Assembly (NCBI RefSeq): GCF_003918875.1 | Contig: NW_025765403.1 | Location: forward strand, 1,364,001-1,428,000 | DNA from: Haliotis rubra | Taxonomy: Eukaryota | Direction: 5' to 3' | Length of the DNA: 64,000 bases | Shown here: one piece after another, positions 31,140 through 57,811 of the stretch | Layout: each line of letters begins with the position of its first letter | Position numbering within the stretch: the stretch's first letter is position 1 | Notes under the pieces: model-generated | Told to the model about the DNA's origin: nothing | The model's database searches: none | The model's input: the letters and a program-made list of their open reading frames with translations, nothing else | Made by a program: the position numbers and the translations under genes

Positions 31140-31270
31140 ACAAAAGCAAAACCAAACCGAAAGTAGGCACCCGTGCACATTTTACTAGTAACATTACATC
31201 AGCTGTATTTCCCAGTAACGTCGCCAGTTCTCGGAAACAGGAAGTGCAGTTGCGATAGGGGACTTCTTAG
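31140..31270 (+). promoter_or_regulatory. Putative promoter of ZNFX1-A with ISRE-like, GAS, ETS and kB-like sites
   Basis: AAACCGAAAGT 31154-31164, TTCTCGGAA 31228-31236, CAGGAAGTG 31238-31246, GGGGACTTCT ~31258; followed by CAG|GTAGT donors at 31369 and 31412. Confidence 0.55.
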
Positions 31271-31332
31271 TCGTTTAACGTCTCATTCAGCAATATTCCA
31301 ACTATAAGGAGAGCGGGGTGGTTGACGGGGCC

Positions 31333-36515: not shown

Positions 36516-39500
36516 AATATCTGCCAGAAGTCATCACTACGAACATGAAGACAACACAGAACAGACACGTCGGTACGATCGTACAGGAGGGTCAGGGCGG
36601 AGGTGGGATGATGATGGTGGCGACCACGAAAGATCTGGAGAAGAAAGGGGAGTCAGAGCATGGTCGACAGACAGATCAATCAGCGGTGAACTAAGATGGG
36701 GAGAAGGAAGAGGTGGATCCAGAGGTCGAGGAAGAGGTAGATACTATGATGACAGAGGCACAGGTCACAGTAGTGGAGGTTTTAGAGGAAGAGGAACAAA
36801 TGTAGAAGGAGAGCGAGGGCATCACAGAGGGGGATACAGAGGAAGAGGAATCTGTGGAGATGGAGCGAGAGGACATCATAGCAGAGGTTATAGAGGAAGA
36901 GGACGAGGAGGCAGAAGAGAGGGACTGAATTTAACCCAACTTGAAGAACTCAGGGAAAAAGACCCTTCCACCATTGTAATGACGCTGGGATTGGAGTCAG
37001 GAATTGGCCTTTTCTTGAATCAAAAATCTCTTAATCAACGTGAGGTGTACACCTTTGTGAGTGTTATAGCCAAAGCATGTCGTTGCACAACTGCTCCTGA
37101 AAGTTTCAACAGAATTCTACTTACTATTCGACAGTCTCAATTTTATGAACATGTATCGGGTGTCTTGGGAAGTAGTATTCGCGGGTTGTCATTAACTGAA
37201 GAAGAAAGAAGAAACTTTCTTGGAGACCTGGCAATATTTATGAAGGAACTTTATATTCGGCTACCTCACTCTGCCATGGAAATGAAGGTTCTCGGTTTGG
37301 AGCATCTCTTGACAAATGAAATTCACAAAATGCAAAGGACATCTGACAACATTCCGCGGGACATTCTGTCAAACATTTCCGCACTCCAGGAACTAAAGGC
37401 TACTGTGCTTGACCAATCAAGGAGCAAGCAGGCAGAGAGGGATGAGCTCAAAGAGGGTGGCCCACCTGATGATTTCAGACATGTATCTATTTTTCCAAAT
37501 GCTGATGATATTCATCCAAGTGAAAAACCATTCCTCAGAAAAAACAAATCAGTTGGCGGCTACAGGGATCTGGACCATTATCTCGATGTACAATTCCGAC
37601 TTCTGAGGGAGGATTTTATTTGTCCCCTGAGAGAAGGCATAGAAGCCTACCTTGTTGCAGAAGCTCCTGGTAAGCGAGGACAGCGTTTGAAGGATATCAG
37701 AGTGTATCATGATGTGCACATTGTTAGGACTTTGTGCTCCAACAATGGTCTACTTCACAGAATATCTTTTGATGTGAGCAATCTTCAACGTGTTAGGTGG
37801 GAAAATTCGAAGAGACTCATTTATGGATCCTTACTTTGTCTATCAAAGGATAATTTTAAGACTCTCTTGTTTGCAACCATCACTGAGCGAGATCCTAAGC
37901 TACTGAGAGAAGGGTGTGTAGATGTACTTTTTGAAGAGTCTGAAGATCTTGACAAGAGGCACTTTGACACAAAGTTTGTCATGGTGGAGACAACAGCTTT
38001 CTTTGAAGCTTATCGTCATGTGCTACGAGGTTTACAAAAGATAAAGGAGGGAGACCTACCATTTGAAAAGTACATTGTTGCATGCAAAAACACTGTCAGT
38101 CCTCCAAAGTATCTCAAGGAGGCAGTGTCAATTGAAGGAAAATCACCAAAGTTTGATCTGCGCCCACTGATTGATGACAAAATTGATTTGCGGGAAGACA
38201 AACACCTACTTTCTCAAGGGCGTGAAGTAAGCTATTTCTTCAGTCATGATTCGAGATGTGGCAAAAGTGTTCATGTCTTGGAAAATAGGGACTGGCCCTC
38301 TCCAGAGACACTCCATGTTGATAATTCACAGTTCCAGGCCCTGAAAACAGCTTTGACAAAGGAGTTTTCAATCATACAAGGTCCACCTGGCACTGGAAAG
38401 ACTTATGTTGGGTTGAAAATTGTCAAAGCTCTTCTTCATAATGACCAGATGTGGAAAAGGCAGCAACTCACACCTATGTTGGTCGTGTGTTACACAAACC
38501 ATGCCTTAGATCAGTTTCTAGAGGGAATAATTAGTTTCTACAAGGGCAGTGTCATCAGAGTAGGCAGCAGAATTTCAAATGAGCAACTTGAACGTTACTC
38601 GTTGAGGGCTAATAGACAAAAGATGAGAAACGACAGGGACAAGGATCGAGATATGAAGAATGTTGGTAAAAGGCGATGGGAGACAAAAAACAGAATGCTT
38701 GAACTTCAGTATCAGATTGAAGAAGTTGGAATGAAATTAGAGGATGCCGAAAAGACAGTTTTGCATGAAGATGTATTGAGGCCATATATGAAAAGTCATT
38801 ATGACACAATATTAGCAACGATGAGAAGAATGCACAGACAACAAGAAACTGAATACCATCACAAGTTGCCATTTCCAATGTCCTTCATAGTAGAATGGCT
38901 TGGAGTTGGCAGCATGGAGGCTACAATTGCAACTTTTGGAGATCAGAGGCAAGACGCATTTGAACAGGAATATGATGAAGAAGTTGAGGAGATTGACGTT
39001 CAAGAAGAGGCAGGGATTGTCCAAGCACAGCGCCGGGTTCATGACATGGATACAGATGACTTCCCCACCAATGAGTTTGAAATTAAACAAAAGAAGATCA
39101 GAGGTCTCCAGAATCAAAGAGATAAATATGTGGCTTTAGATGTTGCCTCGTTTGACAAAAACCAAATGCCGGTAGGAACAGCAACAGGATTTCAATACAC
39201 AAGAAAGGAAAGAAAAAACATTAAGCGTCGAATGTTGAAGCAGCTAAAATCCACACAGAGAATGTGGGAAATGGAAGCACTTCGTGTTAGAGACCCATGG
39301 ATGCTGACCATGGAGGACAGATGGAGGCTTTACAGACACTGGGTGTACAAATTTTGTGAAAAGTTACAGAAGGATATACACGCAAAAGAGCAGAGCTACC
39401 GGGAGGTTGTGGCAGAATACAAAGAGCTGCAAATGAATGAAGACATGCAGATACTACGAGAAGCTACAGTTATTGGCATGACAACTACTGCAGCAGCACG

Positions 39501-42013
39501 TTATCAACAAGCCCTTGCAGAAATTGGTCCACGTATCATTGTAGTAGAAGAAGCAGCTGAGGTTCTTGAAGGACACATCATCAGCACTTTAAGCAAGAAG
39601 TGTGAACAACTGATACTCATTGGAGATCACAAGCAACTGAAACCTAACCCAACAGTGTATAATCTGGCCAAAAAGTTTAACCTAGATTTGTCATTGTTCG
39701 AAAGAATGATTGATAATGGAATCCATTGTGATACTCTCGCCCTTCAGCACAGGATGAGGCCAGAAATATCCACTGTGATGCGTCACATATATCCAAAACT
39801 TCAGGATCACCCATCTGTACTTCGCTACGAGAAAGTGAAGGGAATATCTGCCAACATGTTCTTCATAGATCACAACAACCAAGAGGAGCATGATACAGAT
39901 ATGATGAGTCATTCTAACACATATGAGGCAACATATATAGTTGCCCTCTGCAGTTATCTCCTGAAGCAGGGATATGACAAATCACGAATCACTGTCCTCA
40001 CAACCTATTCAGGTCAGCTGCTTAAACTGAAGAAGATGATGCCAAAACAGGACTTCCAAGGAATGAGACTGACAGTTGTTGACAATTACCAAGGAGAAGA
40101 GAACGACGTTATCCTGTTATCTCTTGTCAGAAGCAATGCTGAAGGAAGCGTTGGGTTTTTGAAAATAGAGAACCGCATATGTGTAGCTCTGTCAAGAGCT
40201 AAAATTGGACTCTTTGTCATTGGCAACTTTAATCTTCTTTCCCAGCAGAGTTTATTATGGAAGGATATCTTGACAGATCTGAAGAAGAACGGTAAAACGG
40301 GTCCAACATTGAACCTTTATTGCCAAAACCACCCCACAGAAACAGGAATCAGTGTTCAAAGCCCAGATGATTTCAAGAAAGCCCCTGAAGGGGGGCTGTC
40401 TGAAGCCATGTGTCTTCAGACTTGAATGTGGACACGTGTGCACATTGCTGTGTCATCCTTATGACCCTGAGCACAAAGATTATATTTGCAGGAAGCAATG
40501 CACCAAAACACTGCAGCAATGGTCACCAGTGTCCCCAGCGTTGCCATGAAGAATGTGGAAAATGCATGATACGTGTTGAAAAGATTATTCCAAAATGTCA
40601 ACACAAACAGATGGTTCCATGCTTCAAAGAGCCCAGCACATTTTCTTGCCAGGCCGAATGTAACACAGCCCTTGAGTGTGGACACACATGTGGAAACACC
40701 TGTTCCATGAAACATGGGTGTACAGCAGTCGTGAAAAACATTTAGATGCGGGCACACAGGCGACGTCCTTTGTACGAGGAAAGCATCAGCACAATGCGAA
40801 GCCAAATGTTCTGAACTTCTGAAATGTGGGCATAAATGTGAAGGTGACTGTACACGATGTCATGAAGGAAGGCTGCACATACCATGTCGCAAGATGTGTA
40901 AAGATACTCTGATCTGTGGACATGTCTGTGTATCTGGATGTTCTGAATGTAATCCATGCAGAAAAGCATGTCAAAATCGCTGTCAGCACAGAAAATGCAC
41001 GAAATATTGTGGGGAGCCCTGTGATCCGTGCAGTCAGCCATGCGTATGGGAATGTGAACATCACAGATGTACACTTCCCTGCTGCGAGCCTTGTGACAGA
41101 CCACCCTGCAATGAACCATGCAAGAGGAAGCTACCTTGTAAACACCCATGCATAGGTCTGTGTGGAGAACCATGCCCAAAACAATGCGGCATTTGCCACA
41201 AAGATGAAATCATGAAAGTAAATCCAACGCCTGGTGCACGATTTGTATTCCTTGAGGACTGTGGTCACATTGTAGAAGTGTCAGTACTTGACCACTATAT
41301 GAACCAAAACTCAGAGGAGATCAAACTGAAAGTCTGCCCACATTGTAAGACAGTGATCAGGCACAATGTGAGATATGGGTCTGTGGTCAAGAAGAATGTG
41401 AAGAATATTGAAGTCGTTAAAAAGCTCTGCAATGAGAAAAAGACAAGGTTCCACACAACGAAACAAAGACTTATGATGGAAGTGAGGTATGAGGAAGAAC
41501 AGGAAGAGAATGGCATGAAGACAACCATGTTCCACCGAGGTTACACCAACACAGTGGCCGGACTCTCTGCGCTGGAAAACCAGTTTCACCTCCTAGATGC
41601 ATTGAAAAAGGTATCTGCTGAATACAAAAAATATACAGTGACCACATTTGTGAATGACGATCCCTCAAGCTCAGAGGAGGTAGATTTGCTCTACAAATGG
41701 CTGAAAACTCCAAGACAAGTCTTCAGTGAGCAAGAGCAATACGATGCCAAGAATGAACTCCTCAGACACAGAGCAGTTTTGGTATATCTTAGATGTGGCC
41801 ATGAAAGACAGACTACACTGATGCGAATCTATTTGCCAATGCTGAAAGACGTTCTGTTGTCAGGAAAGCCATACACAGAGGAGAAGCAGACCAGAGTTAG
41901 AACTCTATTTAACATACTGGGGGATACCGTGCCCACTGATAAGGTACAACAGAAGGTGAAGCTGGTTGGCAATATAGGACCAGCTTCTGGAAAGTGGTTC
42001 TCCTGCAGGAGAG
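36516..42013 (+). CDS. ZNFX1: ZNFX1-A giant exon: RGG N-terminus, ARM-like region, SF1 helicase, NF-X1 zinc fingers, RING-like segment (3 apparent +1 frameshifts at ~40390, ~40510, ~40737)
   Basis: Motifs LEELREKDPSTIV, YLDVQFRLLREDFICPLREGI, QGPPGTGKT, VCYTNHALDQFLEG, VVEEAAEVLE, LIGDHKQL, QHRMRP, VDNYQGEE, RICVALSRAK, Cys/His-rich NF-X1 fingers, ARFVFLEDCGH...CPHCK. Donor GAG|GTGCGT at 42014. Confidence 0.92.
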
Positions 42014-42269
42014 GTGCGTACTACCTTTATCGACCTTTATTCACACACTGGGGCATAATGAACTTATACTCACTTTATAAGTTACTTTGTAAAAAATTTT
42101 GTAAGGTATCAACATTACAATATTGGTACATCTTTGGATTTTAAGAATTTCAGAACTGTATAGAAGACTATGTTGACATGTATATACTGGTACCCACATT
42201 CACATAACTGCATTTAAGACATATGTGAAATTTCGTGATTTATGTTAGCTAATTTCATGTCTCTTTTAG

Positions 42270-44523: not shown

Positions 44524-44698
44524 NNNNNNNNNNNNNNNNNNNNNNNNNNNNNNNNNNNNNNNNNNNNNNNNNNNNNNNNNNNNNNNNNNNNNNNNNNNNN
44601 NNNNNNNNNNNNNNNNNNNNNNNNNNNNNNNNNNNNNNNNNNNNNNNNNNNNNNNNNNNNNNNNNNNNNNNNNNNNNNNNNNNNNNNNNNNNNNNNNN
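44524..44698. other. Assembly gap
   Basis: Run of N. Confidence 1.
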
Positions 44699-45004
44699 TG
44701 GTCATGTAATTATGTACTGTTGTCAGAATTTCAAATGATATGACTATGTACAACTGCTATGCTAACGCCTTTAACCACCAGTAAGCCACTTGTATGCCTA
44801 TGTAGGCGATTGTTTCTACAAGGGGACTTGAGGACAACATAAACACCTATCTGCCGCGTCAACACAGTGGAAGCGGTATATAATAGGGAATGACGATAAG
44901 GTTATAATCCTTCCTCTTAGGAAATATTTGCCTGTTACTGTCTTGTAAATATACATTTGAATTTAACTGACATATTGTATGCTAGACGTGTCTGCTTGTA
45001 TAGT

Positions 45005-45009
45005 AGAGT

Positions 45010-45045
<36 letters not shown>

Positions 45046-45075
45046 CAGAGAGAGTACGACAGAGAGAGAGGCGAG
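45005..45075. repeat. (AG)n microsatellite
   Basis: Direct reading. Confidence 0.9.
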
Positions 45076-46038
45076 CGAGTGAAAGACAGAAAATATTACA
45101 TAACTATAAATACTTGTGGCGACAATTCATTTGATACAACCCTTTCACTTCTTGTAAAAGATATGGAAATTTACTTATGTTTTTAAACAAATGATTTCAT
45201 AGGTATATTAGGTACAACTTTTTTAACCCCGAAGTTAAACGTTTATTCCGATTAAAAAACTTATAAAACACATCCGATTAGTAGCATACATGTACATGTG
45301 CAAAAACTTAACTTCTGTGTACAGTCACACTATTAATAATAGAAATCGTCGGAATGTGTCGATTTATCCGTATTTCGAGACAAACAGAATGTTGATATTT
45401 AACCATAGTGTCTAAAAGGACTGGTGGTTGTTTATCGAATAATTATATAACGGGTTAGAGGCGGTTTTACTGGTCAGTAAAAAGCAAACTAAACTATATT
45501 CGGTATGGGATAATTCCGAGTTTTATATGTTCTGGGGCCTACTTCCTCAAAGCGTTTTATTTTATTTGTTTTATTGTAACTGAAGAAACAATTTGAAGTG
45601 ACAGTTGTATGTTACACACGTGTCAATCGAAATAACTGTTCATTCCCATTTTTTTATTATGTAAATATTTGTCGTTGTAATTGAAGATTCTTATACAGAA
45701 ATTTTTTTCGAAGATCCGTAAAATGAAACCACTCACTAACCTAGTATAATTACCCAAATGAAAATACCGAAATAAAGTCAGACTTGATCTTGATTCACAT
45801 TCGATTCGATTTCAGTCCCACTCTTAGATATCTTCAATACGTATTTATTGTATTACCTGGCTACGATTGAATCACATAGGGCATGAAAGCAGGCTGTCTT
45901 TGCTTATATGGCTCATGATCACAGGTAACTGTTCGGCTTACAGTGAATCCATTCACATTGTACCGTTGTCGGGTGCCATGACTTCAGAATCAGTTGGCAC
46001 CACTATCATCTTCTCCTTTGAAGCTGTTTAGCTGTAGA

Positions 46039-46391
46039 GGCGGTGGGGTATCCTAGTGGGTAAAGCGCTCGCTCGTCAGGCAATAGCCACGAGTTCTATC
46101 CTCCACATGGGTACAATGCGTAAAGCCCATTTTTGGTGTCCCCCGCCGTGATGTTGCGTGAATATTGCTAAAACAGCGTAAAACCAAAATCCACTCACTG
46201 TTTGAGCTGTATCTTTTATTACAAAGGAGACGGCAGGATCACCTATTGGTTAAATCACTCGCTCGTCACGCTGAAGACGCGGGTTCGATTCCCCACATGG
46301 GTACAATGTACGAAACCCATTTCTGATTCCCCCCTCCGTGATATTGCTGGAATATAGATAAAAAGCGGCGTAAAACTAAACTCACTCACTT
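46039..46391 (+). mobile_element. Two adjacent SINE family A copies (46039-46199, 46236-46391)
   Basis: Consensus sequence; the first copy has TSD ctgttt(g)agctgta. Confidence 0.85.
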
Positions 46392-46507
46392 TCGACAAAG
46401 ACATTGGATGTTGCTGAAAATTTAAATGAATTACTTTGGATGATGCTTATCATTTATCTTTCAATGGCACCGTTACTCTCGCTATGTCCGTGAATCGCTA
46501 TATGGCC

Positions 46508-46693
46508 NNNNNNNNNNNNNNNNNNNNNNNNNNNNNNNNNNNNNNNNNNNNNNNNNNNNNNNNNNNNNNNNNNNNNNNNNNNNNNNNNNNNNNNNNNNNN
46601 NNNNNNNNNNNNNNNNNNNNNNNNNNNNNNNNNNNNNNNNNNNNNNNNNNNNNNNNNNNNNNNNNNNNNNNNNNNNNNNNNNNNNNNNNNNNN
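46508..46693. other. Assembly gap
   Basis: Run of N. Confidence 1.
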
Positions 46694-46869
46694 GTAACCT
46701 GTTCCCTTCACACCATTTCACACATAATTATAGGCAGAAAGATGATGGATATAATCGGCTATTTTGATCCACTTTTGTCTCGCGCGACACTCACATGAAG
46801 TACTATGAAACAGGCTGCAGTTTCTGTTCCTATTTTTGGAAGCACCATGCATTATGAAAGATAGACAGA

Positions 46870-47029
46870 TTGCTGAACTGAAACAGAAAGTAGCTGTAAT
46901 TCCTGGATAGTGGGATGACGTCAGACGAATTCCGGGAAATTTACTCCCGATAACAAAGACTCACCAAACCTTACATATGACCAGATGTGAGTTGATATGA
47001 GCAACAGACTGGAACATTTCGTGCTGCAG
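46870..47029 (+). promoter_or_regulatory. Putative promoter and non-coding first exon of ZNFX1-B with ISRE, CRE and GAS sites
   Basis: GAACTGAAACAGAAAGT 46875-46891, TGACGTCA 46916-46923, TTCCGGGAA 46930-46938, donor GCAG|GTATGT at 47030. Confidence 0.6.
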
Positions 47030-47206
47030 GTATGTAGACTGGTTGCACGCTAAACTATGTATGTCACTTGTATTTGCAAGTGCTAGTTTCTAAATAACAA
47101 GGCTTGTGTCACTGCAAGTGACATTTAATATAAACAGTTAATCAGTACGAGCATGTCTGATTTTGAATCTATGAACTAGTGTATTTGCTACTACAGCCAA
47201 ATCGTA

Positions 47207-47362
47207 GGTGGGTAGCCTAGTGGTTAAAGCGTCCGCTCGTCACGCTGAAGACCCGGGTTCGATTCCCCAGATAGGTACAATATGTGACGCCCATTTCTGG
47301 TGTCCCCCGCCGTGATATTGCTGGAATATTGCTAAAAGCGGCGTAAAACCATACTCACTCAC
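47207..47362 (+). mobile_element. Young SINE family A with TSD ctactacagccaaa
   Basis: Near-consensus sequence; TSD at ~47189 and ~47362. Confidence 0.9.
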
Positions 47363-47733
47363 TACTACAGCCAAACATCATAAGGAGCTACGCAAATACG
47401 TCGAGTAACTACATTATTTTGAATCTTTGGAATAGTGCAGTTGCTACTACAGTCAGCCCCCGCCACGAACAACGTAACTACGTCGATTTATCCACGGTTC
47501 GACATAACCTAAACTATGAATATAGAATGCATAGGAAGGGAACAAATCGTTCGCAATTCAGTTCGGCATATCGAAGCTCGACACAACGGTATTTAACTGA
47601 AAAACAACCCACAGTGTCATGGTGTCGATTACTTTGCCATGAATAGGGTATGTCCTTTGATAACGTCGCCATAGTGAGAGCATTGTAAATTATGTATGGG
47701 TTGCGTGAACGGTGCATTGTATTGATCAAAATG

Positions 47734-49241
47734 TACTAGGCACATAAAGAAACTGTGCATACAAAAAATTAAAATCTAAATTTATCAAACCTGTGTAGAC
47801 ACATAAGGATTTAAACTCAGAGATTAGTGACATGTATCCAACATGCAGGCACGTGCAACGTTCCGTGACGTCAGTGGGTTCGTCCTGGAGACGTGCAATA
47901 CGTTGTTGCACGTGCATTCCGGGAAAGAGAAACAGAGCAAATGAATGCCACACAATACTGTCACTTTGGAAAGCTCAACCCCTGCCCTTGCGATCGTTCA
48001 ACAACTTAAACGGCTATTGAAACGCATAGCATGCCAAGGCTCACGTCTGCACAACGTCATGAGGCCATTGGGATGGTCCGTGGGGGAATGTCTCAACGAC
48101 AAGTGGCTGCACATTTCCACTGCCACCGGAACACCATTTCTGCACTGGTGAGACGCAGAACACAAATGACGTCATCGATCGGCCACGTTCTGGACGTCCA
48201 CGTGTAACAACGCCAAGACAGGACAGATGGATAAGAGTGACCCATCGGCGCCACAGGTTTCAGATTGCAGTGATGACTGCCCGAACCATCCCAGGACTTC
48301 GCCGTATCCACCCCAACACAGTTCGACAACGTTTACGTCATCATGGGATCAGACCACGACGTCCCGCCATACAGCCTATCCTGACACAACGTCATCGACA
48401 AGCTCGCCGAATGTGGTGCCGAAATCATGTCCGCAGACCCTTGTTTTGGTGGAGAAATGTTGTTTTTACAGATGAGTCCAGGTTGAACATTTCCCATAGT
48501 GATGGACGTCAAAGTGCCTATATACGCGTAGGAGAACGTTATGCACAGGCCTGTGTCTTGGAGAGGAATCGCTTTAGTGGTGGTTCCGTGATGATTAGGG
48601 GTGGAATAACAGCACGCCAAAGAACTCCTTTGGTGATTGTTCAGGGCATCTTAACTGGTGTGGGCTACAGGGATCAGATTCTTCGACCTGTGGCAATTCC
48701 TTTTCTGCAACGTCATGGCCCTGGGTTAACATTCCAACAGGACAATGCCCGCCCTCATACGGCAAGGGTTGCTATGGATTTCTTGCAACACCACAACGTT
48801 GACTTACTGCCTTGGCCTGCAAATTCACCGGATCTCTCCCCGACAGAGCATGTTTGGGACGAGATGGATCAGCGTCTACGCCGTCTTCCTAATCCGCCAG
48901 ATAACGTCCTTGACCTTGCAACAGAACCTGAGAGAATCTGGCGTTACATCCCACAAGCCTTCCTTGCACGTTTGATAGGCTCTATGCGTCGTCGATGCAC
49001 TGCTGTTCTCAATGCCGATAGTAGACATACCCGTTATTGAGCTTGTGACATTGTCGTTTGACCCCTGTCCCGCTTGTGGACTCGTGACGTCTTTGTGATT
49101 GACTTTTCAATTGAAAATCTCCCGACTTGTTATAGTCTCATGATCCCTCCATTAAAGTTTATATGTAACTTTGACATGGTTATCGTACCAATCAACTGGG
49201 ATAATATTTTGACAATGCACAGTTTCTTTATGTGGCTAGTA
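47734..49241 (+). mobile_element. Tc1-family DNA transposon (DD34E), about 1.5 kb, decayed
   Basis: 27-bp TIRs tactag(g/c)cacataaagaaactgtgcat at both ends; TA-flanked right end. Confidence 0.9.
48031..49040 (+). pseudogene. Tc1 transposase pseudogene
   Basis: MPRLTSAQRHEAIGM HTH start, RSGRPRVT, FTDESR, FQQDNARPH, WPANSPDLSPTEHVW with 34 residues between the second D and E; frameshift near 48160; W>R in the MxWGG motif. Confidence 0.88.
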
Positions 49242-49599
49242 TATGAATCATATGTATGTAGGCTAGTTGGTGAATAATAGATCTTTGTGAATGATGTAAA
49301 ATAAATATAATTTCATCGTGTTTCTTTCTGTGACACTCAAGTGATTTCCTCCGTATAGACCAGTTTCAGAGACCAAAAGTCATTATTACAGCGATGTAAT
49401 ATCTGTTTGATTTAGTCAGATATCTCGACTAAATCTAATAACTTGATTTGATATAAAATAATGTCTCCCACAGAGAGTTGGACATAAGTTTTGCGTGGTT
49501 TGAGTTTCCATTTTCTGAACTTTGACTTATGTCAGATTTTGTCAGGTTTCCTTATCACTAACTGATCAACTGACAGGATCCTGTTAGCAGGAAACGCGT

Positions 49600-49822
49600 T
49601 TTGTTTGTTTGTCGTTTAACGCCACACTCAACAATATTCTACCTATATGTCGGTGGTTTGCAAATAATCCAGGGATTAACATCACGAGTATCGATCTACG
49701 CAAATGGGATGCTATGATATGTGTCTACCAAGTCAGCGAGCCTGACCACCCGATTCTGATAGTCGCATTTAACGACATGCATGGGTTGCTGAAGATCAAT
49801 CCTAACCCGGATCTTCACGGGT
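49600..49822 (-). mobile_element. SINE family B (degenerate)
   Basis: caagtcagcgagcctgaccacccgat...ccggatcttcacgggt. Confidence 0.75.
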
Positions 49823-50561
49823 ACAGGGCAAAGGAACTTCTAAACACTTGCTTACTTAAGTAAATGATGGTGGTCGAAGCTGTTGTTGTCCTCTTCTTTG
49901 AGGGGTCGAAACTGGACATCAAGATAATGGTCAAGATTCTGGTAACCACCGATGGTTTTATTCTTTCTCAGGAATATGCCCTTTAGCATATATGTCATTG
50001 GTATTTGGCATTATGGATAAAGCTCTAAAATCATCAGCTGTATTTCAGATTTGGCGGCCAAAGCTGTTGTTGTCCTCTGTTTCGAATTGTAAAAATTTCG
50101 TTTCGTTTAAAAATGTATGAAATAGAAAGGAAACAATTTCGTAACCAGGACTGTATTTCAAATTATAACCATATACCAGTATGTCATACTTGTATTTGTA
50201 AAGTTGTCACCCCGATACTAAACTTACAGCAATGCAACATGTATGCTATTTAGACAAGCACGTGTCAATGTGTGACGCTGTGTATCGCAGTGTTATCTTC
50301 TTTATGTTATTTATCCTGGCGCTCGGCATTAATGGGCAAGCAAGGACAGGTCGTCGAGTCCTGCTCAACTGATGTCGATGCTAAAAACTTGATTGATAAG
50401 ATAGGTTTATGATTTGTTGTATAGTTAATAGTTTGAAATGTGGAAAATAGGTGGTTTCGTTTTATAGTTGTCATTCTTTGTTTTCTCGATTTGTCTTTGT
50501 ATAATATGACATACATGTTTTATTACTATGTGATACAACTATACATCATTTTGTATTGTAG

Positions 50562-50627
50562 GTTCACAGGAGGAACGGGAGGTGATGGAGACGGAAGGAC
50601 GGCTGAGGATATTACATTTTGTGGAAG
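50562..50627 (+). other. Probable second (66-bp) exon of ZNFX1-B
   Basis: Acceptor ttgtattgtag, purine-rich body, donor GAAG|GTAAT; same length and position as exon 36193-36258 of copy A. Confidence 0.45.
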
Positions 50628-50835
50628 GTAATATAAAAAAATGCCTCCTGTAAAGCAGTTCTGAATTTGTGTATTGCAGACATCAATTTGAAAAGTAAAA
50701 CCTGTTGTCATGCGTGTATTTACGTATAAATAGGTATTTTAGCTCAACTGGGGCGTTTGGATTTCATGCAATGAATACCTGTGCTGAATGTGCGAAAACA
50801 CATGAAAAATGTGTTATAACATGCATCAAACACCC

Positions 50836-50975
50836 AGTTGTGGAATGGTTTAAACGTTCGTGCGTCATGCTGAAGGCCCAGGTTCGATTCCCCACTTGGG
50901 CACGATGTGTGAAGCCCTTTTCTGGTGTCCCACGTCATGGTATTGCTGGGATATTGCTAAAAGCAGCGTAAAAAT
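50836..50975 (+). mobile_element. SINE family A (degenerate)
   Basis: ggttcgattccccac...tttctggtgtccc...atattgctaaaagc. Confidence 0.75.
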
Positions 50976-51092
50976 TCCTTGGGCTCTGAGCTCTGTGACT
51001 TCGCTTCACACCCGTCGATTGTTGGTCAAAATTAAGTCCGTCCTAATATAGCTGAAATACATTACACAATTTTTCTATTTTTTAACAATTAG

Positions 51093-54000
51093 ATGTGTCG
51101 CGCACAACCAGATACAGAAGGCGGCGAAACAATTGAAAAGAAAAACGATCGTGATCAAAGTGTCAGAAGAGAAGCAGGCGATTTGAACGGAAGAATCAGA
51201 GAGTTTGACAGAACAGACATTTGGAAAGATCGGCGTTCTGGTGAAGCAGATATCCAACGTCATGCTGATTTCAAAGACTTGAAATTGCACGGAGATGAAT
51301 ACACAGGCGTGGAGAGAATAGTATACAAGAGGCTGAGCAATTGGAGAGACAGAGATTCTCGTAGTATAGACAGCAATCAGAATGAAGGTTTCAAGGAAGC
51401 TCCTTCAGACAGAAACACAGGCCAAGAGGGAGTCGATTCCTTCAGGACAGACAATTGGAGAGTTCGGGCGCCCAGGCCTCCCATATTAAACAAGATGTAG
51501 GTTTCAAAAAGTTTGACAGGCTCACAGATCGAAACCAAGGCCCAGCTGATTCTACAAAAACAGGCAACTGGAGGGATCGGTGTCCTGAGGGAACAGATAT
51601 CAAGCAGCATGTTGGCTTTAAAGCCCGGAAAAAACTCAGATGGAAACAGCCAACAATGCCAAGTTGATTCTACAAGAACAGGCAACTGGAGAGATCGGGG
51701 TTCTGAGGGACCAAATAACAAGCAGCATATATGCTTGAAAGCGCGAGAAGTAAATTCAGATGGAACCAGCCAACAATGCTCAGTTGATTCGTCGAGAACA
51801 AGTAATTGGCGTGATCGGTGTCCTGAGGGACCAAATATCAAGCAGCATGTAGGATTCAAAACACGAGAAGTACACTCAGGTGGACAAGCAAGACAATACA
51901 CAACTGATTCTACAAGAACAGGCAACTGGAGAGATCGATGTTCTGAGGGAGCAGATATCAAACGGGAAGTTCACACAGATAGAGAAACAGGACAGCATGG
52001 AAGAATTGTGAAAGGAACAGGTACACAAAGATATGAAAACTCCCGTGGCCTGGTTTTGTCCCAGCTCGAAGAACTGAAAAATAAGGATCCTTCTACTATT
52101 CTGTTCACACTGAATTCAAGAATACATAGTTTGATGGATCAACATACTCTTCCACCCAATGCTGTGTATACATTTGTAAGTCTCATAGCACAGGGCATCC
52201 AATGCAAAACTGAGTCCAGCAATGTCAGCAAAATGCTACTAGCTGTACAAGAGTCTAACTTCTATGAACATGTTTCACATATTTTGGTGTTACTTGATAC
52301 AAATCTGACAGAAGAAGACAAGACTCGATGTTTCCTAAAGGATCTGATAACCATTCTTTGTGAATTGTACATTCGACTGCCACATGCCTTTATGAAAGTA
52401 AAGGTACTTGGCTTGGAGGAACAGTTGACATTGGTAACCCAAAAGCTGCAAAGAAAATCCAATATCGTTGATGACGAAATTGTTTCTAATTTGAGTGAAC
52501 TCCAAAAACTGAAATATTCAGTTCTTCAGAAATCAGTGACAGTTAAAGAGGAGGACAGAGAAGGTGAACCTCCTGATGACTTTAGAGCTTTATCCATACT
52601 GCCAAATGCCAGTGATATCTATGGTAAAGAGATCATATTCCTGAGAAAGAATAAAACCATCGGTGGTTACAAGAATCTTGACCATTATCTAGATGTCCAG
52701 TTTCGACTCCTCAAAGAAGATTTTGTTGGTCCATTGAGGGATGGTATTGGAGCTGTTGCTGAAAACACCAAGTTGAAACAAGGACAGAGGATAAATTACG
52801 TCCGAGCATATCATGGTGTACAAATCGGTAGGAAAGTTTGTTCAACCAGTGGAATATTGCACAGACTGCACTTTGATGTAAGTGGTCTGCAGGAGATGGT
52901 GTGGGAGGAGTCCAAGAGTCTCATCTATGGTTCGTTAGTGTGCCTGCTGCCAGATGGCTTTGACACATTTATCCTGGCCACGATCACTGACAGAGACCCC
53001 AAACGTCTCAGATCAGGCATCGTAGATGTATCGATTGAATTTGGTCAGTTTGAAATAGGATCTGACATGAAATATACCATGATTGAAACAACAGCTTTCT
53101 TCGAAGCCTATCGCCATGTGCTCAGAGCTTTGCAAGAGATTCACGAAGGGGAACTTCCTTTTGAAAAGTACATCATTCACTGTGAAACCAGTCAGGACTC
53201 TCCAAGATACCTAACAAGATATTCCGGATCATCAGTTTATGACTTGCAATCACTGACAGAAAAAGCTTTGCCTGAACATATGGACGACCTTGCTTATGAA
53301 TCTACTGTAGCAGTGAATATTTTGGAAGATGAAGATTGGCCTACAGCAGCTACTCTCGGTTTGAATCCGTCACAGTACGAATCTTTGAGGAACGCCTTGA
53401 CAAAAGAGTTTTCAATCATACAAGGTCCACCAGGAACAGGCAAAACGTTTATCGGTCTGAAGATTGCTAAAGCTCTGCTCCATAATAGTCATCAATGGAA
53501 GAAGCCTATGTTGATTGTGTGTTACACAAATCATGCTTTGGATCAATTTCTTGAGGGAATCATTAGCTTTCACAGCAAAGGTGTCATCAGAGTTGGCAGT
53601 AGGATTTCAAAAGAATGCCTTGAAGGCTACTCACTAAACGTTCTAAGGTGGAGAAATCGAAGCAAACTCATGAAGCATATCAGATGGGAACACAGAGAAG
53701 CCATTGAATGGTTTCAAGAAATGCTGGAGGACGCACATGTGACACTGGAGAATGCAAGAGAGACAATATTACATGAAGACACTCTTTGTCCATACATGCA
53801 TATGTCTTATGACAAGTTGCTGAAAGGGATGAAGACCAAACTTGCAGAGCTTGAGCTTCATCTTGGCCATGAGGTGGAATTTCCTCGATGTGTCAGCCAA
53901 GAATGGCTTGGAGTGGGAAAACTTGAAGCCACTGGATATTTGCCTCAAGGCGTATTTTCAGACATATGAGTTTGGGGAAGAAAAGAAGAAGACAACAATG

Positions 54001-57000
54001 TTACTTTGGGTATGTCAACACCTCAAAATACGTCTGCCCAGAATGAGAATTTCTATGGCTTCCAGTTTCCCAAATGGCAAAGAAAAAGTGTGAAACGACG
54101 CATGCTGGAACAACTTAGGTCATCTGATCGAATGACAGAAGATGAAGCAGAACAAATTTGTGAGCCATGGAGTCTGTCTATGCATGACAGATGGCGGCTG
54201 TACAGATACTGGATTTTCAAACATCGCGAACAGCTGGAAAGAAAAATAAGGCTCTACGAAGAATTGTACAACGAAGTTTCGACAGACTTAAAGAGATTAC
54301 AAGAGACCGAGGACAGGATATTATTGGGAAATGCTACAGTGATTGGCATGACAACGACAGCAGCAGCTCGGCATCGACAAATGCTAGCCGAGATTGGGCC
54401 TAGCATCATCATGATAGAGGAAGCCGCTGAGGTTCTTGAAGGACACATCATCAGTACTTTAACCAAGAAGTGCGAACACCTGATACTCATCGGGGACCAC
54501 AAACAACTGAAGCCAAACCCAACCGTTTACAACTTGGCAAAACGGTACCACCTTGATTTGTCCTTGTTCGAGAGGATGGTGACAAATGGGATTCACTGTG
54601 ACACTCTGACTCTTCAGCATAGAATGAGGCCAGAGATATCGTCTTTGTTGCGCCATATTTATCCTAACCTTGAGGATCACCCATCTGTGTTTGATTACGA
54701 AAACGTGAAGGGGATTTCTACCAACATGTTCTTCATACAACACAGAAATCAAGAGGAAACTGATGAACAGATGGTTAGCCATTCCAATGAGTATGAAGCA
54801 GTCTACATTGTTGCTTTGTGTAGTTACCTGTTAAAGCAAGGATATGACCATTCAAAAAATCACTGTGCTCACAACATATGCAGGACAACAGCACAAAATA
54901 AGGAAGTTAATGAGGCAGGGTAATTTCCCAGATGTGAAACTCACAGTTGTTGACAACTACCAAGGTGAAGAAAATGATATAGTCCTGTTGTCTCTTGTCA
55001 GAAGCAATCCTGAAGGAAGTGTGGGATTTTTGAAAATCGAAAACCGCATATGTGTAGCTTTGTCACGCGCAAAAATTGGGCTCTTTGTTATAGGTAACTT
55101 TGAGCTTCTCGCTATGCAGAGCTTACTCTGGAGAGATATCCTGGAAGATTTGAAGAAAAAGAAGCAGGTAGGACCCACCTTGCATTTGTATTGTCAAAAC
55201 CATCAGAGTGGAACCGGAATCAACATTGAAAGTCCAAATGATTTTGAAAAGGCTCCTGATGGAGGTTGTCTAAAACCGTGTGCATTCAAACTCAAATGTG
55301 GCCATGTTTGTTCCAAATATTGCCATCCCTATGACCCTGAACACAAGGAATACCTTTGTATGAGGTCTTGCACTCAGATACTTTGCAGTAAAGGTCATCC
55401 ATGTCCACGACTGTGTCACGAGAAATGTGGACCATGTGTCGTGCCTGTTCAAAAGATCATCCCGTCTTGTGGCCATGAGCAGATCGTCCCATGTTTCCAG
55501 AATCCGAAGACATTCTCCTGTATGAATGATTGTGAGAAACTTTGCAGCAAAGGTCATACATGTCCTCGACCGTGCCACGAAAATTGTGAACCTTGTGCCG
55601 AGCCTGTTCTAAAGATCATCCCGTCTTGTGGCCATGAGCAGATGGTCCCATGTTCCCAGGATCCGATCACGTTCTCGTGTAAGAATAATTGTGAGAAAAC
55701 ATGTAGAAATGGTCATCCATGTCAACAACCGTGTCACGAGAAGTGTGGACCATGTGTCGTGCCTGTTGAAAAGATCATTCCGTCTTGTGGCCATGAACAG
55801 ATCGTCCCATGTTTCCAGGATCCGGAGACATTCTCGTGTAAGAATGATTGTGAGAAACTTTGCAACAAAGGTCATCCATGTCCACAACCGTGTCACGAAA
55901 AGTGTGGACCATGTGTCGTGCCTGTTCAAAAGATTATTCCGTCTTGTGGCCATGAACAGATCGTTCCATGTTTCCAGGATCCACACGACTTCTCATGTCG
56001 GGGCAATTGCGAAACGGATCTTGACTGTGGGCACAGATGTGGAGAAGCATGTGGGAAAGCACATCAATGCAGAGCAACAATTAAGAAGACATTCAGATGT
56101 GGACATGTGGAAGAGGTCTTGTGCATTAACAAAGACACGGTAGAGTGTTGGGTCAGATGCGGCGAGAAGCTTGACTGTGGACACATTTGTGATGGTAACT
56201 GCAACAGGTGTCACGAAGGAAGGCTTCATGTACCATGCCAGAAGATGTGCAAGGAAATACTGATCTGTGGCCATGAGTGTGGCGCCAAGTGTTCACATTG
56301 TCCTCCCTGTAGGATGGCATGTGAAAACCGCTGTCCCCACGAAAGGTGCACTAAATTTTGTGGTGAAATTTGTGACCCATGCATAGCACCTTGTGAATGG
56401 AAATGTGAACATTTTAAATGCACTTTGCTCTGCGATGAGCCTTGTGACAGACCACCCTGCAATGAACCATGCAAGAAGAAACTGCCCTGTGAACATCAAT
56501 GTATTGGCTTGTGTGGCGAACCATGCCCAATGCAGTGCAGGTTTTGCAACGCTGCTCTAGTAAGTAATGTGAGTGGAAAGCCGAATGCAAGATTCGTTTT
56601 CCTGGAAGACTGTGGGCATATTGTGGAGGTTACAAGCCTCGATAGGCACATGGCATCCAAATCAGACGAAATCCAACTGAAGAAATGTCCACACTGTAAA
56701 ACAATAATCAGATACAACATGAGGTATGGAAATGTGATCAAATCCATTCTCAGAAAACTGGAAGTTGTAAGGAAGCAGTGCAATGAACAGGCAGAGACGG
56801 TTCTGGACACAGAAGAAAGGATGATGATTGAAGTGATGGAGGATGATGAATGCGAGGGAAATACAAAAGAAATGATGCTGCGCCAAGGATTTACCAACAC
56901 TGTGGCAGGTCTCACAGCACTACAGAACCAGTTTACCCTCCTGGATGAGCTTTCAAAGATTACCGATGAATATGACCCGTTTTGTTGGTATAGAAGGCAT

Positions 57001-57388
57001 CGCTCGACATATTGATTTGGCCACTAAAGAAACAAAACTATTCCGCACATGGCTGATGATACGAAGACAAGCCTTCAGCAGACAAGACGAATCAGACGCT
57101 CAGAATGAACTGCTTAGACACAAAATGATTATTCACATGCTGGACTTAGAATTTCTTCTGGCGCCAAATCTAAAGAAAGTGACATACAGGGTTACATGCT
57201 GGTTCTGAAAGACATCCTTGTTTCTGGCAAATCTTACTCAGCTGAAAAACAAATCAGGGTTGAAAGAATATTTGACAGACTTTGGGGTACTCTCAACATC
57301 AAGTTCTCAGAGGAGATTGACAATGCAAAGGTGATGATTACACCAACAACTGGAATTGCATCTGGTCACTGGTTGTCCTGTCGCCATG
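51093..57388 (+). CDS. ZNFX1: ZNFX1-B giant exon: NWRDR-repeat N-terminus, ARM-like region, SF1 helicase, expanded NF-X1 fingers, RING-like segment; 5 apparent frameshifts and 1 in-frame TGA (possible pseudogene)
   Basis: Consecutive ORFs 51093, 51455, 51513, 54006, 54844, 56945 and 57196 are collinear with copy A. Motifs QGPPGTGKT, IEEAAEVLE, LIGDHKQL, VDNYQGEE, RICVALSRAK, ARFVFLEDCGH. Donor CATG|GTAAAT at 57389. Confidence 0.88.
51330..51965 (+). repeat. Coding ~120-bp (40-aa) tandem repeat in the ZNFX1-B N-terminus
   Basis: gattc...a(c/t)tgg(a/c)g units at 51435, 51548, 51666, 51786 and 51906. Confidence 0.9.
55381..56016 (+). repeat. Coding 159-bp (53-aa) tandem repeat x4 in the NF-X1 finger region of ZNFX1-B
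   Basis: Units begin at 55381, 55540, 55699 and 55858. Confidence 0.95.
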
Positions 57389-57691
57389 GTAAATATGTTG
57401 TTTGAGACTTTAAAAACGAGATGATTAACATTACTTGGTTTAATTAATAACGGCTGATTTTCTGTTAATTAAACCCTGATACTTCTGTAAACACTTATCC
57501 GTACATTTAATTTAATTTGCGTTATTACATACGAGATTAGGTTGCATACCCAGCTTTTATTATGTGCCTGAACATCTGCATTTTGAACAGATGAGTTTAA
57601 GAACATGGATGATGTTTGGTCTTTATTGTATAGATCTACAAAGATGGGTCACCCTGAGCCTGTCCGGGGCGAAAGATGTTAAAGGTATGAC

Positions 57692-57811
57692 GCCGACCCA
57701 TTCGAATCCCCACATGGGTACTATGTGTGAAGCCTATTTCTGGTGTCCCCCGCCGTGATGTTGCTGGAATATTGCTAAAAGCGGCGTAAAACCAAACTCA
57801 GTCAGTCAGTC
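57692..57811 (+). mobile_element. SINE family A in the last intron of ZNFX1-B
   Basis: Consensus body and tail. Confidence 0.8.

What the first reader, a model, noticed from the sequence alone, without database searches (positions are those of the whole stretch)
46870..47031. ISRE + CRE + GAS module in front of ZNFX1-B (interferon-like enhancer in an invertebrate)
Within 65 bp: GAACTGAAACAGAAAGT (tandem GAAANNGAAA IRF site), TTCCTGGAT (near-GAS), TGACGTCA (perfect CRE/ATF), and TTCCGGGAA (perfect STAT GAS) running into GGGAAATTTAC (kB-like). A strong donor CAG|GTATGT follows about 90 bp later. This is the grammar of a vertebrate interferon-stimulated-gene promoter. Molluscs have IRF/STAT proteins but no recognised interferon ligand.
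Basis: partly seen in the sequence, partly recalled or inferred. Interest (0 to 1): 0.72.

Follow-up and report, generated by a model that had tools for sequence, protein, structure and literature searches.

The report
Conserved IRF/CREB/STAT promoter, abalone ZNFX1
A 70-base cluster of IRF, CREB/ATF and STAT binding motifs next to a short first exon of an abalone antiviral helicase gene (ZNFX1) is conserved across abalone species and recurs before the neighbouring ZNFX1 copies, so it is very probably a real promoter with interferon-type regulatory grammar, although its inducibility has not been tested.

Summary
The window is Haliotis rubra (blacklip abalone) DNA. A strict ISRE+CRE+GAS cluster never arose in 3000 composition-matched simulations.

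The block 46786-47075 is one of the few stretches upstream of ZNFX1-B that still aligns with H. asinina and H. rufescens. Across the three species:
- The CRE is invariant.
- The STAT site keeps TTC...GAA while only its three free bases vary.
- The ISRE core survives in two species. In the third, an inverted perfect ISRE about 60 bp upstream (excluding a SINE inserted between the blocks there) may compensate.
- The splice donor is invariant.
- The kB-like and near-GAS motifs are not conserved.

The same order (ISRE, about 35-40 bp, CRE, then GAS) sits in the conserved upstream blocks of the tandem paralogues ZNFX1-A and ZNFX1-C. In C it lies beside a TATA box and a conserved donor. ZNFX1-D has an ISRE only.

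I read the block as the proximal promoter plus non-coding exon 1 of ZNFX1-B, probably driven by IRF, ATF/CREB and STAT. No transcript data, binding data or induction data could be obtained. ZNFX1-B is interrupted by stops and a frameshift in this assembly. This is a new member of a known kind, of moderate to good interest.

The parts
46786..46868 (+). Upstream conserved block. It carries an inverted ISRE-like element at 46819-46830 (AGTTTCTGTTCC, reverse complement GGAACAGAAACT).
   Evidence: 85% identical to H. asinina L002 6692-6774. The asinina copy reads as a perfect GAAACAGAAACT on the minus strand. The rufescens copy has TTTCTGTTTC plus an adjacent TTCTGGGAA.
46875..46891 (+). ISRE / IRF site GAACTGAAACAGAAAGT (core GAAACAGAAA at 46880-46889).
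   Evidence: The core is kept in H. rufescens (GAAACAGAAAAT). The first half-site is broken in H. asinina (TAAACAGAAAGT). Nine of 10 core positions are invariant.
46900..46908 (+). Near-GAS TTCCTGGAT. Not part of the conserved grammar.
   Evidence: Kept in H. asinina, lost in H. rufescens. About 3 of 9 positions are invariant.
46916..46923 (.). Palindromic CRE/ATF site TGACGTCA.
   Evidence: Invariant in H. rubra, H. asinina and both H. rufescens copies, 8/8 positions.
46930..46938 (.). GAS / STAT site TTCCGGGAA.
   Evidence: TTCCAGGAA in H. asinina and TTCCTAGAA in H. rufescens. The six specified bases are invariant and only the three N positions vary.
46934..46944 (+). kB-like GGGAAATTTAC. 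Rejected as an NF-kB site.
   Evidence: Fails GGGRNWYYCC. The GGG is lost in both other species and a 5-bp insertion splits the string in H. rufescens.
46949..46956 (+). Conserved GATAACAA box. Possibly a TATA-like or GATA element that positions the TSS.
   Evidence: Seven of 8 bases invariant in all copies. It occupies roughly the position that TATATAA holds after the GAS in the paralogue C module. Its role is inferred.
46960..47029 (+). Putative non-coding exon 1 of ZNFX1-B. The 5' end is not mapped. The 3' end is the donor CAG|GTATGT.
   Evidence: The donor and the preceding GAGCAACAG are invariant in all four copies. The ATG at 46997 is AAG in H. asinina.
47030..50569 (+). Intron 1. It contains a tRNA-derived SINE (47210-47363), a Tc1/mariner element (47731-49244) and a reversed ZNFX1 fragment (about 49850-50050).
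   Evidence: The Tc1/mariner element is absent at the orthologous site in H. asinina and H. rufescens.
50570..50627 (+). Exon 2, homologous to the exon that holds the orthologues' start codon (ATG at 50585).
   Evidence: Alignment A3. In H. asinina, exon 2 plus exon 3 reproduce the N-terminus of P0125. In H. rubra this ATG is out of frame with exon 3.
51093..57390 (+). ZNFX1-B coding body. Exon 3 starts after the acceptor ttttttaacaattAG.
   Evidence: Pfam ZNFX1, AAA_11 and AAA_12. The acceptor is conserved. 72% and 64% identical to H. asinina P0125 over the two frames.
31154..31246 (+). Equivalent module of paralogue ZNFX1-A: AAACCGAAAGTAG (31154), CRE-like ATTACATCAG (31193), GAS TTCTCGGAA (31228), AGGAAGTG (31239).
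   Evidence: Block conserved in H. asinina (L004) and H. rufescens (L005).

Best explanation
Region 46786-47029 is the proximal promoter and short untranslated first exon of ZNFX1-B. ZNFX1-B is one of at least four tandem ZNFX1 helicase paralogues (A-B-C-D) in Haliotis rubra.

Shown by comparison:
- The block is a conserved non-coding element in three abalone species.
- It is on the sense strand and ends in an invariant GT donor.
- It lies upstream of exon 2 (50570-50627) and exon 3 (51093 onward).

Inferred:
- Transcription starts some 20-40 bp after the conserved GATAACAA box.
- Exon 1 splices at 47029 to exon 2.
- Promoter output is set by three factors bound side by side: an IRF on GAAACAGAAAGT (with a second, inverted IRF site about 60 bp upstream), an ATF/CREB bZIP dimer on TGACGTCA, and a STAT dimer on TTCNNNGAA.
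- In this model, sensing of viral nucleic acid activates the IRF, and cytokine-like JAK signalling activates STAT. ZNFX1 paralogues are then induced together, as vertebrate interferon-stimulated genes are.
- The arrangement looks ancestral to the gene cluster, because A and C keep the same order and a similar ISRE-to-CRE spacing (35-41 bp).
For: 1. The motifs are present, and a strict triple cluster is absent from 3000 simulations.
2. Of the 4.4 kb upstream of exon 3, the module region is one of only a few short stretches that blastn still aligns with H. rufescens. It also aligns with H. asinina.
3. Footprint: CRE 8/8 invariant, GAS 6/6 with variation only at the N positions, ISRE 9/10, donor 9/9. 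Motif cores against other positions give p = 1.5e-4.
4. Apparent site turnover: H. asinina loses the proximal ISRE half-site but has a perfect inverted GAAACAGAAACT in the upstream block.
5. Paralogue A's conserved upstream block reads AAACCGAAAGTAG, then T(G/T)ACGTCA, then TTCTCGGAA. Paralogue C's reads GAAAGCGAAAATAG, TGACGTCA, invariant CAGTTCCTGGAAAG, TATATAA, a second TTCTNGGAA and an invariant donor, in four species. Paralogue D's reads GAAAATGAAACTAG plus a donor.
6. A relaxed triple-cluster scan of 219 kb of Haliotis loci gave 11 hits against 0.03 expected. Ten of the 11 are ZNFX1 upstream modules.
7. The module has no other copy in the window and no Rfam match.
8. Context from the literature:
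- Oyster IRFs activate ISRE and IFN-beta reporters (PMC5557890).
- The oyster receptor CgIFNR-3, which binds CgIFNLP, activates ISRE, STAT3 and GAS reporters (PMC8218723).
- ZNFX1 is induced by OsHV-1 in oysters (bioRxiv 10.64898/2026.05.15.723513).
- The human ZNFX1 promoter is reported to carry STAT1/2, IRF1 and IRF9 motifs (PMC11959080).
Against: - No transcript, CAGE, chromatin or binding data could be obtained. No Haliotis ZNFX1-B transcript contig turned up in the protein searches, so the TSS and the exon 1-to-exon 2 splice are inferred.
- The ISRE core is not intact in H. asinina. The CRE is degraded in H. rubra A (ATTACATCAG) and deleted in H. cracherodii C. The GAS is broken in H. asinina A. 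No single site is therefore indispensable everywhere.
- TTCC/GGAA cores can also be read as ETS sites, and TGACGTCA is common in constitutive promoters.
- ZNFX1-B carries in-frame stops and a frameshift in this assembly. In H. rubra the promoter may therefore serve a decaying gene.
- Orthologous copies are not independent observations. The real replication is three or four paralogue families.
Confidence: 0.6

Rival explanations
1. The block is a real ZNFX1-B promoter, but it is a constitutive or stress-responsive one. In this reading TGACGTCA binds CREB/ATF, the TTCC/GGAA cores bind ETS-family factors and the A-rich element binds some other factor. The resemblance to an interferon-stimulated promoter is then only nominal.
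For: CRE and ETS-like cores are ordinary promoter elements (established knowledge). A clear ETS-like AGGAAGTG follows the GAS in paralogue A. GAATTCC is the most invariant part of the B GAS region. ZNFX1 has been linked to heat and salinity stress in molluscs (PMC9234619, PMC11959080).
Against: Across species and paralogues it is the palindromic frame TTC-N3-GAA that is preserved while the inner bases vary. That pattern fits a STAT dimer better than a single ETS core. Tandem GAAA repeats with 2-nt spacing recur in all four paralogues. ZNFX1 is virus-induced in oysters (bioRxiv 10.64898/2026.05.15.723513).
Confidence: 0.22
2. The block is conserved and was once a promoter, but in H. rubra it now fronts a pseudogene. 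Alternatively, it drives a separate non-coding transcript rather than a productive ZNFX1-B mRNA.
For: In this assembly B has in-frame stops at 51498, 53967 and 57013. It also has a frameshift in an A-run near 54850 and an exon-2 ATG out of frame with exon 3. No NCBI-named protein for B from H. rubra appeared in the searches, whereas A and C did.
Against: The motifs in H. rubra are as intact as, or more intact than, those in species whose B gene is annotated as full length. A and C from the same assembly are also truncated or flagged LOW QUALITY, which suggests assembly errors. The ATG at 51093 sits directly after the conserved acceptor and is in frame.
Confidence: 0.1
3. The cluster is a chance co-occurrence of short motifs in non-functional intergenic DNA, picked out after the fact.
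For: The motif set was chosen after reading the sequence. Two of the five named motifs (near-GAS and kB-like) do not hold up.
Against: 0 of 3000 simulations produced the cluster. The block is conserved in three species while the flanks are not alignable. Motif cores are more conserved than their surroundings. The architecture recurs in unalignable paralogous promoters.
Confidence: 0.03
4. The module belongs to, or derives from, a transposable element whose own promoter carries such motifs.
For: A Tc1/mariner element 1 kb downstream carries its own TGACGTCA, TTCCGGGAA and GAAAGAGAAA at 47866-47932. It shares the 11-mer ATTCCGGGAAA with the module. SINEs flank the region.
Against: The module has no other copy in the window. 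Apart from a local 5.6-kb tandem duplication in H. rufescens, it has none in about 219 kb of related loci. It sits at the orthologous position in three species, whereas the Tc1/mariner insertion is absent at the orthologous site in H. asinina and H. rufescens.
Confidence: 0.03

Closest known systems
Vertebrate interferon-stimulated gene promoters (ISRE and/or GAS), including the human ZNFX1 promoter
   Same: Tandem GAAA half-sites with 2-nt spacing and a TTCN3GAA palindrome lie within about 100 bp of the start of a ZNFX1 gene. Human ZNFX1 is reported to carry STAT1/2, IRF1 and IRF9 motifs in its promoter (PMC11959080).
   Different: The second half-site reads GAAAGT rather than the canonical GAAACT. 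No ISGF3 (STAT1/STAT2/IRF9) complex and no class II cytokine interferon are known in abalone. Induction is not shown here. A full CRE sits between the two elements.
IFN-beta enhanceosome (ATF-2/c-Jun site PRDIV, IRF sites PRDIII-I, NF-kB site PRDII)
   Same: Compact side-by-side arrangement of a bZIP (ATF/CRE-type) site and IRF sites within about 60 bp upstream of a TSS (own knowledge of the family).
   Different: The order differs (IRF, then CRE, then STAT). The third partner is a STAT palindrome, not NF-kB, and the kB-like string fails both the consensus and conservation. The spacing is looser. The target is an effector/sensor gene, not a cytokine.
Invertebrate IRF-driven antiviral promoters (shrimp Vago; the oyster IRF/CgIFNLP axis)
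   Same: Native or reporter ISRE-type elements respond to invertebrate IRFs (PMC4602278, PMC5557890, PMC8218723). The concept is an interferon-like system without a canonical interferon.
   Different: Those studies rest on reporter or binding experiments, mostly with mammalian ISRE reporters. Here the evidence is purely comparative, but it covers a native composite ISRE-CRE-GAS module conserved across species and paralogues. My searches found no paper describing this for mollusc ZNFX1.

Membership tests
ISRE / IRF-binding element | Tandem GAAA half-sites spaced by 2 nt (GAAANNGAAA, canonically followed by CT) | tested here: met
   GAAACAGAAAGT at 46880-46891. The strict GAAANNGAAACT 12-mer is not met in H. 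rubra. It is met on the minus strand of the upstream block in H. asinina.
ISRE / IRF-binding element | Evolutionary constraint on the half-sites | tested here: inconclusive
   Nine of 10 positions are invariant, but the one change (G to T in H. asinina) breaks the first half-site. A second inverted site nearby may compensate. IRF-type repeats recur in paralogues A, C and D.
ISRE / IRF-binding element | Bound by IRF proteins and mediates induction by virus, dsRNA or cytokine | not testable with these tools
   Needs EMSA, DAP-seq, CUT&Tag and reporter assays.
GAS / STAT-binding element | Palindrome TTCNNNGAA | tested here: met
   TTCCGGGAA (H. rubra), TTCCAGGAA (H. asinina), TTCCTAGAA (H. rufescens, both copies). 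Only the N positions vary. The same holds for the second GAS of paralogue C.
GAS / STAT-binding element | Bound by a tyrosine-phosphorylated STAT dimer after JAK activation | not testable with these tools
   No binding or signalling data are available.
CRE / ATF site | Full palindrome TGACGTCA | tested here: met
   46916-46923, invariant in all four B copies. Present as TGACGTCA or TTACGTCA in most A and C copies, degraded in H. rubra A and deleted in H. cracherodii C.
NF-kB site | GGGRNWYYCC decamer, conserved | tested here: not met
   GGGAAATTTA lacks the 3' YCC. The GGG is lost in H. asinina and H. rufescens, and an insertion splits the string in H. rufescens.
Core promoter plus first exon of ZNFX1-B | Sense-strand position upstream of the gene, with a conserved splice donor ending a short exon | tested here: met
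   The donor CAG|GTATGT is invariant in three species. The exon 2 and exon 3 acceptors are conserved. Synteny A then B is kept.
Core promoter plus first exon of ZNFX1-B | Mapped transcription start and spliced transcripts | not testable with these tools
   No Haliotis B transcript contigs were retrieved. Gene ranges in the fetched loci begin at the start codon, so UTR exons are not reported.
Core promoter plus first exon of ZNFX1-B | TATA box or initiator at the right distance | tested here: inconclusive
   B has only a conserved GATAACAA (46949-46956). Paralogue C has a conserved TATATAA about 22 bp after its GAS.
Transposable-element-derived sequence | Multiple dispersed copies, terminal repeats | tested here: not met
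   Single copy in the window. Orthologous position in three species. No Rfam or SINE match over the module.

The most novel reading that the evidence does not exclude
The IRF, ATF/CREB and STAT composite promoter would be an ancestral bilaterian wiring of the dsRNA-sensing helicase ZNFX1. It would be inherited by all four abalone paralogues and mirrored in the human ZNFX1 promoter. If so, the ISRE/GAS regulatory grammar of interferon-stimulated genes predates interferon itself, and interferon was later plugged into a circuit that already existed.
Probability: 0.3. Interest if true: 0.8.

Novelty: new member of a known kind. Interest (0 to 1): 0.58.

Why it matters
Work on interferon-like immunity in molluscs has relied mostly on mammalian ISRE/GAS reporters and on expression profiles. 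Native cis-elements of mollusc antiviral genes are poorly described.

This locus offers a compact, phylogenetically footprinted ISRE-CRE-GAS module, replicated in three or four paralogous promoters. It can be tested directly with site mutants, recombinant IRF/STAT and poly(I:C) or HaHV-1 challenge. A positive result would show that IRF/STAT control of ZNFX1 is shared between molluscs and vertebrates. It would also supply a native reporter for abalone antiviral signalling, which matters for abalone herpesvirus disease.

Tried and rejected
- kB-like site: it fails the consensus and conservation.
- Near-GAS TTCCTGGAT: lost in H. rufescens.
- Coding exon 1 (MSNRLEHFVLQ): the ATG is AAG in H. asinina. 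With exon 2 included, the frame hits a stop after 44 codons.
- Duplicate of the module before ZNFX1-A by sequence similarity: blastn finds none. The A module was found only through its own orthologous conservation.
- A candidate paralogue C module at window 62363 (a TGACGTCA): not homologous to the C module of other species. The true C module lies just past the window end.
- Structured RNA: no Rfam hit in 44700-51100.
- Transcript evidence: no Haliotis B-like transcript contigs in either length class searched. Isoform X2 of H. rufescens is not on record. This was solved through its cluster member P0317.
- The large representative-protein search, structure prediction and the sigma-70 promoter scan were not used. 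The protein's identity was already clear, and the scan does not apply to eukaryotes.
- The two N runs (44524-44698 and 46508-46693) were left untouched. The same-genome loci I fetched (L001, L006) do not cover them.
- No contig looked human.

Full report
**Origin and gene context**

The window's own 786-aa ORF product (P0001) lies on GenBank contig QXJH01000146.1 of assembly GCA_003918875.1. Locus L001 places window position 46709 at record position 1410709. [quoted passage not shown] The window is therefore blacklip abalone DNA.

Pfam finds ZNFX1, AAA_11 and AAA_12 helicase domains in two ORF groups: 36979-42144 (ZNFX1-A) and 51093-57015 (ZNFX1-B). A and B are old duplicates, 67-74% identical at the nucleotide level in coding sequence. 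Two further paralogues follow on the same contig. C has its CDS start about 5.9 kb beyond the window end, and D lies after it. The setting is thus a tandem cluster of at least four ZNFX1 genes.

**The observation**

| Motif | Coordinates |
|---|---|
| GAACTGAAACAGAAAGT | 46875-46891 |
| TTCCTGGAT | 46900-46908 |
| TGACGTCA | 46916-46923 |
| TTCCGGGAA | 46930-46938 |
| GGGAAATTTAC | 46934-46944 |
| CAG\|GTATGT | 47027-47035 |

In 3000 first-order Markov simulations of the window, none contained GAAANNGAAA, TGACGTCA and TTCNNNGAA within 100 bp. Because the motifs were chosen after reading, I treat this only as a first filter.

The window has a second such cluster at 47866-47932. It lies inside a Tc1/mariner element, with terminal inverted repeats at 47731-47769 and 49206-49244 and a DDE_3 transposase ORF.

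**Orthologous loci**

The H. asinina protein P0125 (2265 aa) is the B orthologue. It is 82% identical over the N-terminal domain block. Its locus L002 keeps the order A then B. The H. rufescens orthologue (P0317, with P0240 as isoform X2) gave locus L003.

- Window 46786-46868 and 46865-47242 align to L002 6692-6774 (85%) and 6914-7257 (70%).
- Window 46879-47075 aligns twice to L003, at 7893-8093 and 2276-2476, because of a 5.6-kb tandem duplication.
- Against H. rufescens, the module region is one of only a few short stretches of the 4.4 kb upstream of the large coding exon that remain alignable. It is therefore a conserved non-coding element.
- It has no other copy in the window and no Rfam match.

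**Footprint (alignments A1 and A2)**

- The CRE is ATGACGTCA in all four copies.
- The GAS is TTCCGGGAA, TTCCAGGAA and TTCCTAGAA in the three species. The six specified bases never change and the three free bases all do. That is the pattern expected of a constrained STAT palindrome.
- The change from H. rubra to H. asinina is a CpG-to-CpA transition that leaves the motif intact.
- The ISRE is GAAACAGAAAGT (rubra), GAAACAGAAAAT (rufescens) and TAAACAGAAAGT (asinina, first half-site broken).
It reads GGAACAGAAACT in H. rubra (46819-46830, minus strand) and a perfect GAAACAGAAACT in H. asinina. In H. rufescens a GAAACAGAAA core overlaps a TTCTGGGAA. This looks like binding-site turnover within a maintained cluster.
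- A GATAACAA box (46949-46956), the string GAGCAACAG and the donor CAGGTATGT are also conserved.
- Within 46869-46960, 23 of 24 ISRE/CRE/GAS core positions are invariant, against 38 of 68 remaining positions (p = 1.5e-4).
- The near-GAS is lost in H. rufescens.
- The kB-like string fails the NF-kB consensus, loses its GGG in both other species and is split by an insertion in H. rufescens.

**Gene structure**

- In H. asinina, joining exon 2 (L002 9986-10038) to exon 3 (from L002 10499) reproduces the annotated N-terminus of P0125 exactly.
- The homologous H. rubra exons are 50570-50627 and 51093 onward. Both have conserved acceptors.
- The module-adjacent exon, ending at 47029, lies 3.5 kb further upstream. 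It is best read as an untranslated exon 1, because its ATG (46997) is AAG in H. asinina.
- Intron 1 carries a tRNA-derived SINE, the Tc1/mariner element (absent at the orthologous site in H. asinina and H. rufescens) and a reversed ZNFX1 fragment.
- I could not obtain transcripts. No Haliotis B-like transcript contig appeared in the protein searches. The gene ranges in fetched loci begin at the start codon. The TSS and the exon 1-to-exon 2 junction are therefore inferred from conserved splice signals.

**Replication in paralogues**

This is the strongest new evidence.

- **Paralogue A.** The only upstream block conserved in all three species (window about 31050-31246; L004, L005) reads AAACCGAAAGTAG, then about 40 bp, then ATTACGTCAG or ATGACGTCAG (degraded to ATTACATCAG in H. 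rubra). After about 25-35 bp comes CAGTTCTCGGAAAC, which is broken in H. asinina.
- **Paralogue C**, in four species including H. cracherodii. It has an invariant GAAACGAAAGCGAAAATAG and then TGACGTCA or TTACGTCA, which a 10-bp deletion removes in H. cracherodii. An invariant CAGTTCCTGGAAAGCCC follows, then a TATATAA box about 22 bp later. Next is a second GAS, TTCT(T/G/C)GGAA, in which only the free base varies, and finally an invariant donor. This is plainly a TATA-containing promoter.
- **Paralogue D.** The candidate block shows GAAAATGAAACTAG, a perfect ISRE in H. cracherodii with one mismatch in H. rubra. A donor follows, but no CRE or GAS is present.
- All four paralogues share GAAA(G/A/C)TAG. 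A, B and C share the order ISRE, CRE, GAS with 35-41 bp between ISRE and CRE.
- The modules are not alignable to one another by blastn. They are therefore either very old homologues held by selection on the sites alone, or convergent.
- A relaxed scan (AAANNGAAA, TKACGTCA, TTCNNNGAA within 120 bp) of 219 kb of non-redundant Haliotis sequence found 11 clusters, against 0.03 expected. Ten are these ZNFX1 upstream modules and one is the Tc1/mariner cluster. Orthologous copies are not independent, so the effective replication is three paralogue families, plus D for the ISRE.

**Mechanism**

Shown here: a conserved, sense-oriented, promoter-proximal block with a conserved first-exon donor, whose most constrained bases coincide with IRF, ATF/CREB and STAT consensus sites.

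Inferred: these factors bind and make ZNFX1-B, with A and C, inducible by viral nucleic acid or by cytokine-like JAK/STAT signalling.

Published work on other molluscs is consistent with this:
- Oyster IRF2 and IRF8 activate human ISRE and IFN-beta reporters (PMC5557890).
- The oyster receptor CgIFNR-3, which binds the IFN-like protein CgIFNLP, activates ISRE, STAT3 and GAS reporters (PMC8218723).
- ZNFX1 is up-regulated in OsHV-1-infected oysters (bioRxiv 10.64898/2026.05.15.723513).
- A review states that the human ZNFX1 promoter carries STAT1/2, IRF1 and IRF9 motifs (PMC11959080).

I found no paper describing native ISRE/GAS elements at mollusc ZNFX1 genes.

**Rivals**

- The main rival is a real but constitutive or stress-type promoter, in which the TTCC/GGAA cores are ETS sites and the CRE acts alone. 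The preserved TTC-N3-GAA frame and the recurrent GAAA repeats argue against it but do not exclude it.
- A second rival is that B is a pseudogene in H. rubra. This assembly has in-frame stops at 51498, 53967 and 57013 and a frameshift in an A-run near 54850. The exon-2 ATG is also out of frame. However, A and C from this assembly are also truncated or flagged LOW QUALITY, so assembly error is plausible.
- Chance and transposable-element origin are both unlikely.

**Verdict**

The kB-like and near-GAS elements and a coding exon 1 are not supported, and function remains untested.

It is a new member of a known kind, namely IRF/STAT-type promoters of antiviral genes. Its added value is that the architecture is conserved across species and across a paralogue cluster in an animal without a canonical interferon.

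Noticed in passing
window 47731-49244 (cluster at 47866-47932): A decayed Tc1/mariner element sits in intron 1. It carries its own TGACGTCA, TTCCGGGAA and GAAAGAGAAA about 100-165 bp upstream of the likely transposase ATG (48031). It shares the 11-mer ATTCCGGGAAA and the 9-mer TGACGTCAG with the host module. The element is absent at the orthologous site in H. asinina and H. rufescens. Whether its promoter mimics host immune or stress grammar is open.
   Followed up: partly
window 51093-57390, and 40423-40894 for ZNFX1-A: The ZNFX1-B reading frame is interrupted in this assembly. There are in-frame stops at 51498-51500, 53967-53969 and 57013-57015, and a frameshift in an A-run near 54850. Apparent compensating frame changes occur in the N-terminal repeats near 51465-51620. 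The exon-2 ATG (50585) is out of frame with exon 3. ZNFX1-A also runs through in-frame stops after 40423. Pseudogenisation and assembly error cannot be told apart here.
   Followed up: partly
L006 4100-4345 (equivalent to window 64015-64260, just past the window end); L006 10001-16629 and 22165 onward: ZNFX1 forms a tandem cluster A-B-C-D on this contig. The paralogue C promoter module (triple GAAA repeat, CRE, two GAS sites, TATA box, donor) starts a few bases beyond the end of the window.
   Followed up: yes
L003 2276-2476 and 7893-8093 (H. rufescens): A 5.6-kb tandem duplication has doubled the ZNFX1-B promoter and exon 1 in H. rufescens. Both copies keep all motifs and the donor. NCBI lists two transcripts encoding the same isoform X1 protein, which would fit two alternative first exons. 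This was not verified.
   Followed up: partly
window about 49850-50050 (minus strand); L002 9253-9465: A reverse-oriented fragment of the ZNFX1 domain coding region lies in intron 1 of ZNFX1-B. It is shared with H. asinina, so it is an old rearrangement remnant.
   Followed up: partly
window 35412-35561, 46046-46199, 46236-46389, 47210-47363, 50846-50973, 57701-57814: There are many copies of a tRNA-derived SINE. The copy at 47210 is flanked by a 40-nt direct repeat (47160-47199 and 47416-47455, 85% identical), unusually long for a target-site duplication. H. asinina has a different SINE insertion between the two conserved promoter blocks.
   Followed up: no
window 51200-52000; L002 10900-11950; L003 10900-12320: The N-terminus of ZNFX1-B consists of about 40-residue (120-nt) tandem repeats with an NWRDR motif. 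Copy number differs between species and between the two H. rufescens isoforms (2449 and 2369 aa). Paralogue A has an RGG-rich N-terminus instead.
   Followed up: partly
window 28001-32000: This stretch has very strong G-over-C skew (GC skew 0.83 in 28001-30000 and 0.37 in 30001-32000). It lies directly upstream of, and runs into, the ZNFX1-A promoter block. It is probably a G-rich simple repeat and was not examined.
   Followed up: no
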